Origin: Octopus bimaculoides
Taxonomy: Eukaryota
NCBI RefSeq assembly: GCF_001194135.2
Contig: NC_068990.1
Coordinates: 2,376,127-2,440,126 of the forward strand
Direction: 5' to 3'
DNA: 64,000 nt
Part shown: positions 21,429-24,011 of the stretch, in pieces
How the letters are laid out: each line of letters opens with the position of its first letter
Position numbering within the stretch: the stretch's first letter is position 1
Translations under genes and position numbers: made by a program
The notes under the pieces: model-generated
Database searches by the model: none
Seen by the model: the letters and a program-made list of their open reading frames with translations, nothing else
What the model was told of the DNA's origin: nothing

Positions 21429-21460
21429 TATACACACACACCATCAACATTTGGCTGCTA

Positions 21461-23114
21461 TGGAAAGTTCCGAGGAGGGGGAGGAATTAATTCCAGGAAA
21501 GTTCCAAAAAGGGGGGCAAATTACTTCATGGAAACTTCAAAGGAAGTGGAGGAGGGGAGGAATTACTTCCAAGAAAGTTCAGAGGGAGAAGAATTATTTT
21601 CTGGAAAGTTCCGAGGATGGTGAGGAAATACTTCCTGGAAAGTTCCGAGGAGGAGAAGGAATTACTTCCTGGAACATTCCAAGGAAGGAAGGGACGAATT
21701 ATTTCCTGGAAAGTTCCTAGGAAGGGGAGGATGGGATAAATAGGACTTCCAAGAGAGTTCCGAGGCTGGGACTTCCTGGAAAGTTCCGAGGATGTTACTA
21801 CCTGGAAACCTCCGAGGATGGTACTACCTCGATAGATCCGAGGAATTCCTCTAAAATTCCGAATATTTCCCGGAAAGATCCACAGCTGGGTTACTTCCTG
21901 GACATTTCCAAGGATGGGACTTCCGGGAAAATTACGTGTAATTCATGGAAAGTTCCGAGGATGAACTAATACGTGGGAATTTCCGAGGACTTTCTTAGGA
22001 AAGCTCCGAGGATAGGATTTCCTGCTAAGTTCCGAAGACGCTACTTCCTGGANNNNNNNNNNNNNNNNNNNNNNNNNNNNNNNNNNNNNNNNNNNNNNNN
22101 NNNNNNNNNNNNNNNNNNNNNNNNNNNNNNNNNNNNNNNNNNNNNNNNNNNNNNNNNNNNNNNNNNNNNNNNNNNNNNNNNNNNNNNNNNNNNNNNNNNN
22201 NNNNNNNNNNNNNNNNNNNNNNNNNNNNNNNNNNNNNNNNNNNNNNNNNNNNNNNNNNNNNNNNNNNNNNNNNNNNNNNNNNNNNNNNNNNNNNNNNNNN
22301 NNNNNNNNNNNNNNNNNNNNNNNNNNNNNNNNNNNNNNNNNNNNNNNNNNNNNNNNNNNNNNNNNNNNNNNNNNNNNNNNNNNNNNNNNNNNNNNNNNNN
22401 NNNNNNNNNNNNNNNNNNNNNNNNNNNNNNNNNNNNGGGTTACTTCATGGAAAACCCCAGGGATTTTTTCATGAGAAGTTCCAACGATGGGACTTCCCGA
22501 AAGGTTCTGAGGTCGGTACTTCCTGGAAAGCTCCGATGGATTCCTGGAAAGTTCCCCGGATGGGACTTCCTGGAAAGTTCCGAGGGTTTTCTTCATGGAA
22601 AGTTCCTAGGTTGTTACTGCCTGGAAAGTCCCGGGGATGAGCTATTTTTTTTAATATTCCGAGGATTTCCTGGACTGCATGAAAAGTTGCGAGGACTGCA
22701 TGGAAAGTTGCGAGGACTGCATGGAAAGTTGCGAGGACTGCATGGAAAGTTGCGAGGAGGGTTGTGAATTAATTCTTGGAGAGTTCCGAAGGGAGGTGCG
22801 ACGAATTACTTCCGGTGAATTACTTCCAAGGAAGGGCAGGAGGGGAGGAATTAGTTCCTGGAAAGTTCGAAGGAATTGGTGGGGAAGGAATTACTTCGTT
22901 GAAAGTTCCAAGTAGGATGAAGAATTACTTCCTGTAAAGTTTTAAGGGGAGGAAGGAGTGAAATTACTTCTTGCAGAGTTCCAAGGAGGGTGAGGAAGTT
23001 GAGAAATTACTTCCTGGAAAGGTCTGAGGAGGGGAATTACTTCCTGGAAAGTTCCGGAGGGGAGTAACTACTTCCTGGAAAGTTACGGGGGGAAGGAATT
23101 ACTTCTTGGAAAGT
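21461..23114 (+). repeat. Minisatellite array, core ACTTCCTGGAAAGTTCCGAGG plus variable purine-rich linkers (period ~21-35 bp); gap at 22053-22436
   Basis: Dozens of degenerate units. TTCCWGGAA at 21491, 21632, 21666, 21703, 21773, 22520, 22541, 22567, 22855, 23011, 23041 and 23072. Confidence 0.92.
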
Positions 23115-23121
23115 TGTGAAG

Positions 23122-23523
23122 AGGGGCGCCCATCATGCTGCTGCGGAATTTGGATGCTCCTATAATGTGTAACAGAACGCGCATGTTAATCATAATTTAT
23201 ACTCCCGAGTTTTACAAGCAACCATTTTGGATTGACCGGCCGTTGGTTAAGACGTTCTTATAACTCTAATGTCCCTCCTTCACTCCGATACAATCGAAAA
23301 GTTTAAGCGGCTTCAATTTCCTGTCAAACCTTCCTTTGCAATGGCAATAAATAAGGCACAGGGTCAATCATTGCAAATGGTTGGTTTAAATTTCACAGAG
23401 CAAGTGTTCTCCCACGGTCAACATTACATTGGATGCTCCCGTGTTGGCAGGCCACAAAGTCTATACATTTGTGCATCAGAAGGGAAAACGAGAAATGTTG
23501 CCTATAAAGAAGCGCTCCACTGA
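23122..23523 (+). mobile_element. Helitron Rep/Hel PIF1-helicase C-terminal pseudogene fragment
   Basis: GAPIMLLRNLDAPIMCNRTR...FKRLQFPVKPSFAMAINKAQGQSLQMVGLNFTEQVFSHGQHYIGCSRV...TRNVAYKEAL*; matches PIF1 motifs V/VI (FAMTINKSQGQ, FSHGQLYVAxSRV) and the Helitron C-terminal TxNVVYxE. Confidence 0.93.
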
Positions 23524-23983
23524 AAAGACGGCATTTCTTCACATCTTCCAAATCACCCAGTCACCTGCCGCCTCAAAAGCTTCGTACTTGCCGTGCCAGC
23601 CAACGTAAGTCAATGACACACAANNNNNNNNNNACATGCACGCCCAATTGATATATCTTTCAATTTCTGCTCTCTGCAAATACATTTTTTACAGATACAA
23701 CTGCTTACTAAAATTGGGATTAATGTATAATTTCTCTCTATGTTCATAATCAAATAAATGTTTTAATGATTAAACAGACGTCCAATAGAATAGCTCTCAG
23801 AAACAGACTCCGTACAAATTCTTTCTTTACAACTCCTGAAACCATTTTCTGACTGGGTGTTGATGAAATCTTCAAACAGCTGCAGGCTCCAATCGAAACA
23901 GGGGACCCGAAATGATAAGGTTGAGAAACGCTGTTATAGATTATGCCTAACCGAAAACGATCACAGCCACATCATCCAAACAG

Positions 23984-24011
23984 GCCGGGTGAAACTGGGT
24001 TTAGCTGCTAG
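23984..24011 (+). mobile_element. Putative Helitron 3' terminus (subterminal hairpin plus CTAG, followed by T)
   Basis: GCCGGGTGAAACTGGGTTTAGCTG CTAG|T: CCGG-GTGAAA-CTGG stem about 10 nt upstream of CTAG. Confidence 0.55.

What the first reader, a model, noticed from the sequence alone, without database searches (positions are those of the whole stretch)
21444..24011. Helitron carrying a ~1.65-kb array of heat-shock-element/STAT-site units: possible mobile stress-response cassette
Seen: the minisatellite (21461-23114) runs without spacer into a Helitron PIF1 helicase fragment (...GGAAAGTTGTGAAGAGGGGCGCCCATCATG = GAPIM). A hairpin+CTAG|T terminus lies about 490 bp after the helicase stop, and a possible A|TC 5' end sits at 21443-21445. 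The unit CTTCCTGGAAAGTTCC reads tTCCtgGAAagTTCc, a three-pentamer HSE (nTTCnnGAAnnTTCn) with one mismatch; 21598-21612 (tTTCtgGAAagTTCc) is a perfect HSE. The same unit holds TTCCTGGAA, a STAT GAS site (TTCN3GAA; at least 12 exact TTCCWGGAA copies), and the kappaB-like GGAAAGTTCC. Established: Caenorhabditis Helitrons carry HSE-containing minisatellites that bind HSF-1 and rewire heat-shock genes. Inference: a cephalopod Helitron family may convergently spread HSF/STAT site arrays; I know of no description of this in molluscs.
Basis: partly seen in the sequence, partly recalled or inferred. Interest (0 to 1): 0.78.

Follow-up and report, generated by a model that had tools for sequence, protein, structure and literature searches.

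The report
Octopus Helitron remnant carrying a minisatellite
This is a broken copy of a rolling-circle transposon (Helitron) family from an octopus genome whose middle is a 1.65-kb array of short repeats; the array does travel with the transposon, but its likeness to heat-shock and STAT binding sites remains only a likeness.

Summary
The sequence-level observation holds. A variable-unit (21-44 bp) minisatellite at 21461-23122 runs straight into the last ~133 codons of a Helitron RepHel helicase, and a ~490-bp tail ends CTAG|T at 24011.

Genomic reads show that both array borders are fixed junctions. The left leader/array junction and the right array/helicase junction are each shared by an estimated 30-45 other copies. 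The 3' end is a sharp boundary of a family with several hundred to a few thousand copies. The array is therefore an internal module of a non-autonomous Helitron subfamily, not a chance neighbour.

Two details fail:
- The proposed 5' A|TC end is not an end. The window copy is cut at 21448/21449, and other copies continue upstream.
- The 3' hairpin folds no better than shuffled sequence.

The 384-N gap is array on both sides.

The HSE/STAT reading is untested. All motif counts come from one ancestral unit of alternating TTCC/GGAA half-sites, which also makes a perfect ETS site. The cores have drifted 14% from their consensus, the youngest local amplification lacks the motif, and the locus is silent in three RNA-seq runs.

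Helitron-borne tandem repeats are already known in bivalves, frogs, flies and nematodes. This is a new member of a known kind, of modest interest.

The parts
21449..21460 (+). Remnant of the family's leader (ATTTGGCTGCT), the conserved left flank of the array. The window copy is cut here at its 5' side.
   Evidence: About 31 (X23) and 20 (X24) reads from other copies start matching at 21448/21449. Contig loose ends before 21449 agree (0.85-0.94) on ATTGTCGCATTAATACAGGAGGGAG / GCATTAATACAGTAGGGAGATTTGAGGGAG. That leader is absent from the window.
21461..23122 (+). Minisatellite with about 40 recognisable units plus those hidden in the gap. The core is (A)CTTCCTGGAAAGTTCC and the spacer is a purine-rich GAGGAKGGG..(GGAATTA). 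Long units (31-44 bp) lie at both ends; short units (21-28 bp) lie in the middle.
   Evidence: TRF; core search; unit segmentation; composition is 58-59% purine on the + strand.
22053..22436 (.). Assembly gap inside the array (length only estimated). It is filled by further array units.
   Evidence: A 586-nt single-copy contig covers 21900-22052 and runs 296 nt on, with internal matches to array units. A 336-nt contig runs 60 nt into the gap from 22437 (GAGTGGGAGTTCCTTGAAATTTCCGAGGAC).
22672..22758 (+). Locus-specific recent amplification: 4.1 copies of the 21-bp unit GGACTGCATGGAAAGTTGCGA at 98% identity. This variant lacks the TTCC half-site, so it carries no GAS or HSE.
   Evidence: TRF; units; read depth here is about single-copy (0.3-1.5 per strand), so the variant is private to this locus.
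23123..23523 (+). Decayed C-terminal ~133 codons of a Helitron RepHel (PIF1-like helicase domain 2B/2A end). One frameshift near 23245-23251; stop at 23521-23523.
   Evidence: Translation; Pfam Pif1_2B and Herpes_Helicase; Helraiser 7lcc residues 1348-1464, E=2e-17; 86% identical to the Octopus bimaculoides UniRef entry A0A0L8G012.
23524..24011 (+). Non-coding 3' tail of the Helitron family. The last ~360 bp are the most abundant part, at several hundred to a few thousand copies. Contains a 10-N gap at 23624-23633.
   Evidence: Depth profile and variants; 444 reads cover 23984 in a ~0.7x sample; words are shared with five other organisms' runs.
24008..24012 (+). 3' terminus CTAG followed by host T (Helitron-type CTRR|T).
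   Evidence: Sharp depth drop. 141 and 106 loose ends begin behind 24012 with low-agreement AT-rich flanks. The same boundary appears in RNA reads from other copies.

Best explanation
Window 21449-24011 is a 5'-truncated, decayed copy of a non-autonomous Helitron subfamily of an octopus, probably Octopus bimaculoides. The subfamily's body is: leader, ~1.65-kb minisatellite, last ~133 codons of the RepHel helicase, ~490-bp tail, CTAG|T.

SHOWN
- The helicase remnant is of the Helitron transposase type.
- The 3' end is the boundary of a high-copy family.
- Both borders of the array are fixed junctions repeated in an estimated 30-45 other genomic copies. The array is therefore an internal module that was copied together with the Helitron sequences.

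INFERRED
- A deletion derivative of an autonomous element kept the 3' end needed for rolling-circle transposition in trans and acquired, or grew, a tandem repeat in place of most of the RepHel gene.
- After insertion, each array kept evolving by slippage and unequal exchange. Evidence here: the long-unit/short-unit zoning and a private 4 x 21-bp amplification.
- The window copy then lost its 5' part at a site now occupied by microsatellites.

The HSE-, GAS-, ETS- and kappaB-like strings all come from one ancestral unit built of alternating TTCC/GGAA half-sites. At this locus they look like neutrally decaying sequence. Most likely the array has no host function here. Any enhancer activity of the family is possible but undemonstrated.
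For: - Array and core statistics.
- Helraiser is the top solved-structure hit, E=2e-17 against 1e-5 for PIF1. Pfam gives Pif1_2B. A paralogue 86% identical is annotated in O. bimaculoides.
- 3' boundary at 24011|T with hundreds of divergent flanks.
- Right junction: 26-27 reads per ~0.7x sample cross 23106-23120, nearly all with the variants 23106C, 23116C and 23120G. These read ACTTCCTGGAAAGTTCTGAGGAGGGG|CGCCCATCATG, i.e. they come from other copies. Several Logan contigs span 23058-23167 with 9-14 mismatches. The loose-end consensus at 21674 also spells AGTTCYGAGGAGGGGCGCCCATCAT.
- Left junction: about 20-31 reads start at 21448/21449 and share a leader upstream.
- Amount of array DNA: mean depth ~62 over 336 bp at ~0.7x gives roughly 30 kb matched, the order expected from a few dozen arrays.
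- Array continuity across the gap.
- Core divergence of 14%, with 6 of 40 cores perfect.
- The private motif-less amplification.
- No transcription of the locus.
- Precedents for Helitron/Helentron-borne tandem repeats: PMC7492417, PMC12001565, PMC6927752.
Against: - No full-length or autonomous relative and no 5' terminus were recovered. 'Non-autonomous Helitron' therefore rests on the 3' half only.
- The subterminal hairpin, a defining Helitron feature, is not detectable in this copy and is only weak in the read-derived consensus.
- Copy numbers come from ~0.7x read samples and an assumed 2.7-Gb genome (my knowledge), so they are rough.
- It was not shown that the array-bearing copies sit at different insertion sites. 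Segmental duplication could account for some of them.
- The chance that a random unit of this composition carries an HSE (<=1 mismatch) or a GAS site is only ~1.3%, so the motif content is not trivial.
- The RNA runs are of unknown condition and say nothing about heat induction.
Confidence: 0.78

Rival explanations
1. The array is a mobile cis-regulatory cassette: clustered HSF (HSE) and/or STAT (GAS) sites spread by the Helitron make nearby genes stress- or cytokine-responsive, as Helitron HSE clusters do in Caenorhabditis.
For: - The consensus unit holds a perfect GAS palindrome TTCCTGGAA and a three-pentamer HSE with one mismatch. There are 12 exact TTCCWGGAA, 13 HSE matches with <=1 mismatch and one perfect HSE.
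- Such a unit arises in only ~1.3% of composition-matched random units.
- The core is more widely shared among genomic copies than the spacers: depth peaks at 21621-21656.
- The array does spread with the Helitron.
- Precedent in nematodes: PMC6927752.
Against: - There are no binding, accessibility or induction data.
- All sites derive from one repeated unit, and the match was noticed after the fact among many possible factor motifs. The same core is a perfect ETS site and is BCL6/NFAT-like (BCL6/NFAT from my knowledge).
- The canonical HSE is perfect only once.
- Cores have drifted 14%, and only 15% are intact.
- The newest amplification dropped the motif.
- The locus and its flanks are silent in three RNA-seq runs.
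- No gene was recognised near the copy in the window; a Pfam scan of 9 of the longer ORFs found only a mariner-like HTH.
- Array words are species-specific.
Confidence: 0.12
2. The array serves the element or the chromatin rather than host transcription factors. It could be a set of iteron-like binding sites or secondary-structure-forming repeats that help rolling-circle transposition. Alternatively it could be a mechanically special DNA tract, like the C. elegans Helitron-derived PATC insulators.
For: - The core is a triple inverted repeat (TTCC/GGAA/TTCC).
- One long-unit stretch folds better than shuffles as single-stranded DNA (z=-3.6).
- Helitron minisatellites have been proposed to evolve into mechanical insulators (bioRxiv 10.64898/2026.08.08.743475).
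Against: - Three other array stretches fold no better than shuffles.
- There is no consistent 10-bp periodicity: marginal in the left half, absent in the right.
- Most family members (about 95% of 3' ends) lack the array, so it is not needed for transposition.
Confidence: 0.06
3. Chance adjacency: an independent genomic minisatellite happens to lie next to a 5'-truncated Helitron fragment.
For: In the window alone nothing links them except contiguity. Microsatellites are abundant nearby.
Against: The same array/helicase junction and the same leader/array junction recur in dozens of diverged copies.
Confidence: 0.03

Closest known systems
Non-autonomous Helentron elements with central satellite-like repeats in the Pacific oyster (Cg_HINE; also DINE/HINE-type elements of Drosophila and bivalve 'pearl'-type elements)
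   Same: - Mollusc host.
- Same architecture: conserved left module, internal tandem-repeat array of variable length, conserved right module.
- Dispersed in many copies, so the transposon propagates the tandem repeat (PMC7492417; PMC12001565).
   Different: - Here the 3' end is of the canonical Helitron type (CTAG|T), not the Helentron type.
- The right module still contains a recognisable RepHel helicase remnant.
- Units are short (21-44 bp) and length-variable, rather than ~100-170-bp satellite monomers.
- The host is a cephalopod.
Caenorhabditis Helitrons with clustered heat-shock elements (Garrigues et al. 2019, eLife, PMC6927752)
   Same: A Helitron family carrying repetitive, overlapping HSE-like motifs.
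   Different: In nematodes, HSF-1 ChIP-seq binding and heat-dependent expression of adjacent genes were demonstrated. Here there is only a one-mismatch motif resemblance, a single perfect HSE, decayed units and no functional data.
Heli2Xen / Helitron-N2_XT of Xenopus and Helitron-N1_DR of zebrafish (Helitrons composed largely of minisatellites)
   Same: Minisatellite arrays occupy most of the non-autonomous copies and vary between copies (PMC12001565).
   Different: Different unit (166 bp) and no sequence relation. In Xenopus the link to an autonomous copy bounded by the arrays is shown; here no autonomous partner was recovered.
Helraiser (Myotis lucifugus Helitron transposase, PDB 7lcc)
   Same: The coding remnant aligns to its helicase C-terminus, residues 1348-1464, E=2e-17.
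   Different: Only the last ~9% of the protein is present. It is frameshifted and diverged at conserved positions (e.g. CNGTR becomes CNRTR).

Membership tests
Helitron (canonical rolling-circle transposon) | RepHel-derived coding sequence (HUH Rep + PIF1-like helicase) | tested here: met
   The helicase C-terminus is present: Helraiser E=2e-17 against 1e-5 for cellular PIF1; Pfam Pif1_2B. The Rep domain and most of the helicase are absent, consistent with a non-autonomous derivative.
Helitron (canonical rolling-circle transposon) | 3' terminus CTRR, inserted 5' of a host T, with no target-site duplication | tested here: met
   CTAG at 24008-24011, with T24012 shared by the reads. 141 and 106 reads diverge after it into unrelated AT-rich flanks. 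Absence of a target-site duplication cannot be judged without the 5' end.
Helitron (canonical rolling-circle transposon) | Subterminal GC-rich hairpin about 10-20 nt before CTRR | tested here: not met
   The window copy folds at -1.6 to -3.7 kcal/mol, no better than shuffles, and has no inverted repeat. The read-derived consensus gives only a 3+3-bp stem ACCGGGT-GAA-ACCGGGT (-4.4 kcal/mol, z=-0.9). A subset of copies reads on into a perfect 11-bp hairpin plus CTAG.
Helitron (canonical rolling-circle transposon) | 5' terminus TC after a host A | tested here: not met
   The A|TC proposed at 21443-21445 lies outside the family homology, which starts at 21448/21449. Other copies continue upstream with a leader that is absent from the window. 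The true 5' end is missing from this copy and was not recovered.
Helitron (canonical rolling-circle transposon) | Dispersed multicopy family | tested here: met
   The tail is covered by ~300-440 reads per position in ~0.7x samples, and Logan word depth is 450-3,000 times single copy. Words are shared with five further organisms.
Helitron/Helentron-borne tandem-repeat elements (HINE-like) | Tandem array at a fixed internal position between conserved flanks, repeated across copies | tested here: met
   The left junction and the right junction are each shared by an estimated 30-45 copies.
Helitron/Helentron-borne tandem-repeat elements (HINE-like) | Helentron-type ends (insertion between T and T, terminal inverted repeats or palindromes) | tested here: not met
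   The 3' end is CTAG|T without a terminal palindrome in this copy. The 5' end is unavailable.
HSE-bearing Helitrons that rewire the heat-shock response (Caenorhabditis type) | Clusters of canonical HSEs (at least 3 inverted nGAAn pentamers) inside the element | tested here: inconclusive
   One perfect HSE, 13 with <=1 mismatch (ten of these are TCC..GAA..TTC), and 11 of 40 units qualifying.
HSE-bearing Helitrons that rewire the heat-shock response (Caenorhabditis type) | HSF-1 occupancy and heat-dependent expression of neighbouring genes | not testable with these tools
   No ChIP, CUT&RUN or ATAC data, and no identifiable heat-shock RNA-seq. Three RNA-seq runs of unknown condition show no transcription at the locus.
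STAT-responsive GAS element clusters | TTCN3GAA palindromes bound by STAT dimers | tested here: inconclusive
   The sequence criterion is met (21 TTCN3GAA, 12 TTCCWGGAA). Binding is not testable.

The most novel reading that the evidence does not exclude
The ~40 array-bearing copies form a lineage-specific, Helitron-dispersed set of composite STAT/ETS/HSF-type site clusters. Some of them act as inducible enhancers in octopus. That would be an independent, cephalopod parallel to the Helitron-HSE rewiring seen in Caenorhabditis.
Probability: 0.1. Interest if true: 0.7.

Novelty: new member of a known kind. Interest (0 to 1): 0.3.

Why it matters
If only the structural finding holds, it adds a cephalopod example to the known habit of Helitron-like transposons of carrying and spreading tandem repeats. 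It gives annotators a defined element (leader, array, helicase remnant, tail ending CTAG) that explains a class of dispersed minisatellites in octopus genomes.

It would matter more if the arrays proved to bind HSF or STAT. That would be a second, independent case of a Helitron distributing stress-response sites, in an animal whose genome expansion by transposons is often invoked to explain its biology. Nothing here shows that.

Tried and rejected
- Looked for other copies of the array, helicase, tail, leader and the palindromic terminus inside the 64-kb window. None found.
- Tried to fetch the same or paralogous loci from public assemblies through exact-protein look-ups: P0002, the window's 84-aa helicase ORF, an array ORF and a flanking ORF. 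None is on record.
- Scanned metagenome contigs for the 22-nt core plus spacer. No match.
- Considered that the array grew out of the helicase coding sequence just upstream of GAPIM. Rejected: in frame the unit reads LPGKFRGG, which does not match the P.L.L..G context seen in Helitron helicases such as P0001, and other copies show a canonical array unit at the junction.
- Considered a protein-coding repeat. Rejected: unit lengths (21, 26, 28, 31, 34...) are not multiples of three, and the longest gap-free ORF overlapping the array is 116 aa.
- Considered a PATC-like 10-bp phased tract. Not supported.
- Considered tRNA-derived structure in the flanks. ARAGORN finds none.
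Full report
**What is in the sequence**

Reading 20800-24700 and Tandem Repeats Finder confirm a tandem array from 21461 to about 23122, with overlapping periods of 21, 26, 31, 34 and 43 bp.
- The 15-mer TTCCTGGAAAGTTCC occurs 21 times with <=2 mismatches. 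All hits are on the + strand and inside the array, against 0.06 expected by chance.
- Neither the array nor the sequences to its right recur elsewhere in the 64-kb window.
- Segmenting on the GGAAAGTTCC anchor gives about 36-40 recognisable units.
- Long units of 31-44 bp (spacer GAGGAGGGGAGGAATTA) lie at both ends: 21461-21751 and 22759-23122.
- Short units of 21-28 bp (spacer GAGGATGGGA) lie in the middle.
- One block of four 98%-identical 21-bp units, GGACTGCATGGAAAGTTGCGA, sits at 22672-22758.
- The + strand is 58-59% purine.

**The gaps, tested first**
- Gap 22053-22436: contigs of single-copy depth from several runs of the same organism cover 21900-22052 and run a further 296 nt into the gap, with internal matches to array units. 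From the right, a 336-nt contig runs 60 nt into the gap with the sequence GAGTGGGAGTTCCTTGAAATTTCCGAGGAC. The array is therefore one continuous block; its exact length stays unknown.
- Gap 23624-23633: it lies 100 nt after the helicase stop, so reading frame is not at stake. A few reads bridge it. Most other copies continue after 23623 with a TC-rich stretch, CTTCACTCATTCACTCTATCTCTC..., so the gap probably hides a short low-complexity piece.

**The Helitron part**
- From 23123 the sequence translates to GAPIMLLRNLDAPIMCNRTR... After one frameshift near 23245-23251 it continues ...FKRLQFPVKPSFAMAINKAQGQSLQMVGLNFTEQVFSHGQHYIGCSRVGRPQSLYICASEGKTRNVAYKEALH*, with the stop at 23521-23523.
- Pfam finds Pif1_2B.
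- Among solved structures the best match by twelve orders of magnitude is the bat Helitron transposase Helraiser, residues 1348-1464 of 1496, E=2e-17. Cellular PIF1 helicases score 1e-5.
- The closest database protein (86% identical) is a UniRef entry from Octopus bimaculoides. This, together with the run labels, suggests the host.
- Only the last ~9% of RepHel is present.

**Is the 3' end real?** Yes.
- I laid two raw DNA read samples (about 1.9 Gb each, roughly 0.7x if the genome is ~2.7 Gb, the latter from my knowledge) and two sets of Logan contigs on 22437-24700.
- Depth rises stepwise: about 20-30 reads over 23121-23348, about 100 over 23349-23652, and 200-300 over 23653-24011. It then collapses to ~0 at 24012.
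- 141 and 106 reads diverge directly after T24012 into unrelated AT-rich sequence.
- CTAG|T is therefore the 3' boundary of a family with several hundred to a few thousand copies. Its words also occur in runs of five other organisms.
The last 42-72 nt fold at -1.6 to -4.2 kcal/mol, no better than shuffles, and no inverted repeat is found.
- Introducing the majority or frequent read variants (23984A, 23996C) yields only a weak 3+3-bp stem.

- Right junction: 26-27 reads per sample cross 23106-23120, and almost all carry 23106C, 23116C and 23120G. They read ACTTCCTGGAAAGTTCTGAGGAGGGG|CGCCCATCATG, a canonical array unit joined to GAPIM at the same point but from other copies. Several contigs span 23058-23167 with 9-14 mismatches. 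Reads laid on the far left of the array that break off at 21674 give a consensus spelling the same junction.
- Left junction: about 20-31 reads per sample begin to match at 21448/21449. Contigs agree upstream on ATTGTCGCATTAATACAGGAGGGAG / GCATTAATACAGTAGGGAGATTTGAGGGAG, a leader that is not in the window.
- Both junctions thus recur in an estimated 30-45 copies.
- The array-like DNA recovered (mean depth ~62 over 336 bp, roughly 30 kb matched) is of the order a few dozen arrays would supply. I see no sign of a large pool of free-standing arrays.
The window copy is simply cut at 21448/21449, next to microsatellites.
- Array-bearing copies are a minority, about 5-10% of the elements that share the 3' tail.

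**The motif reading**
- The counts are as stated: 12 TTCCWGGAA, 21 TTCN3GAA, one perfect HSE (21599-21611), 13 HSEs with <=1 mismatch, and 11 GGAAAGTTCC.
- They are copies of one ancestral unit made of alternating TTCC/GGAA half-sites, so they count as one observation.
- The same core is also a perfect ETS site (ACTTCCTG, 11 copies). The kappaB consensus is hit only twice on each strand.
- A composition-matched random unit carries an HSE (<=1 mismatch) in 0.6% of shuffles and a GAS site in 0.7%. This is uncommon, but it was noticed after the fact among many possible factor motifs.
- At this locus the cores have drifted 14% from their consensus. Only 6 of 40 are intact and 11 of 40 keep an HSE with <=1 mismatch. 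That is no less than the 5-10% by which most reads from other copies differ from the window's non-repetitive parts.
- The youngest amplification (22672-22758) is private to this locus by read depth and lacks the TTCC half-site.
- Three RNA-seq runs give essentially zero depth on the array, helicase remnant and flanks. Only the high-copy tail collects reads, and these come from other copies.
- RNA contig sets hold at most 5% of the sampled words.
- A Pfam scan of 9 of the longer window ORFs found only a mariner-like HTH.
- There is no consistent 10-bp phasing.

**Comparison with what is known**
- Helitron-like elements that consist largely of tandem repeats are described in oysters: Cg_HINE, with flank, central repeats and flank (PMC7492417).
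- They are also described in Xenopus and zebrafish, and are noted for Drosophila, bivalves and bats (PMC12001565).
- In C. elegans the repeats include HSE clusters bound by HSF-1 (PMC6927752) and have been proposed to evolve into mechanical insulators.
- Octopus Helitrons are annotated as a class, with an expansion about 25 My ago (PMC13282606). I found no description of an array-bearing cephalopod family.
- Membership in the canonical Helitron group is supported by the RepHel remnant, CTAG|T and copy number. The hairpin test fails, and the 5' end is missing from this copy and was not recovered from other copies.

**Verdict**

The 5' end and the hairpin are wrong. The 'stress-response cassette' remains an untested resemblance, with several indications of neutral decay at this locus. 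This is a new member of a known kind and of modest interest.

Noticed in passing
Not in the window. Seen as loose ends of reads after 24011, 23160, 23171, 23329, 21498 and 21653.: A perfect palindrome, GTTCGTCCATCGATCGATGGACGAAC, followed by CTAG (11-bp stem, -11.1 kcal/mol, z=-5.1). It keeps appearing where other copies of this family diverge from the window copy. After 24011 about 34-35 reads per sample read straight into it. It looks like a textbook Helitron 3' hairpin plus CTAG, so it may be the true or an alternative terminus of a related subfamily, or the end of another abundant element.
   Followed up: partly
window 23653-24011: The last ~360 bp of the tail are about 10-20 times more abundant than the helicase remnant and the array. 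Recurrent subfamily breakpoints lie at 23806/7, 23840 and 23853 (consistent loose-end consensuses, also in RNA reads). This suggests several short non-autonomous derivatives sharing one 3' end.
   Followed up: partly
   Followed up: no
window 20785-21012 and 24185-24330: Both flanks carry SINE-like interspersed repeats. There is a 27-bp duplication at 20785-20836, weak copies of 20894-21012 at 36008-36122 and 49474-49520, and read depth of ~10-40 times single copy at 24185-24260. ARAGORN calls no tRNA.
   Followed up: partly
window 2938-3276 (- strand): A 112-aa ORF with a winged-helix HTH (Pfam HTH_24, 2.8e-5) and a mariner-like sequence context (...ITIRELSEDVQISYGSVQSIITEDFGMRLVS). It is probably a Tc1/mariner transposase remnant. 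The window as a whole looks transposon-rich and gene-poor.
   Followed up: no
window 23653-24011, RNA runs X28-X30: The high-copy tail is represented in RNA-seq on both strands by reads 90-95% identical to the window, so they come from other copies. This is probably read-through transcription of copies inside genes.
   Followed up: no
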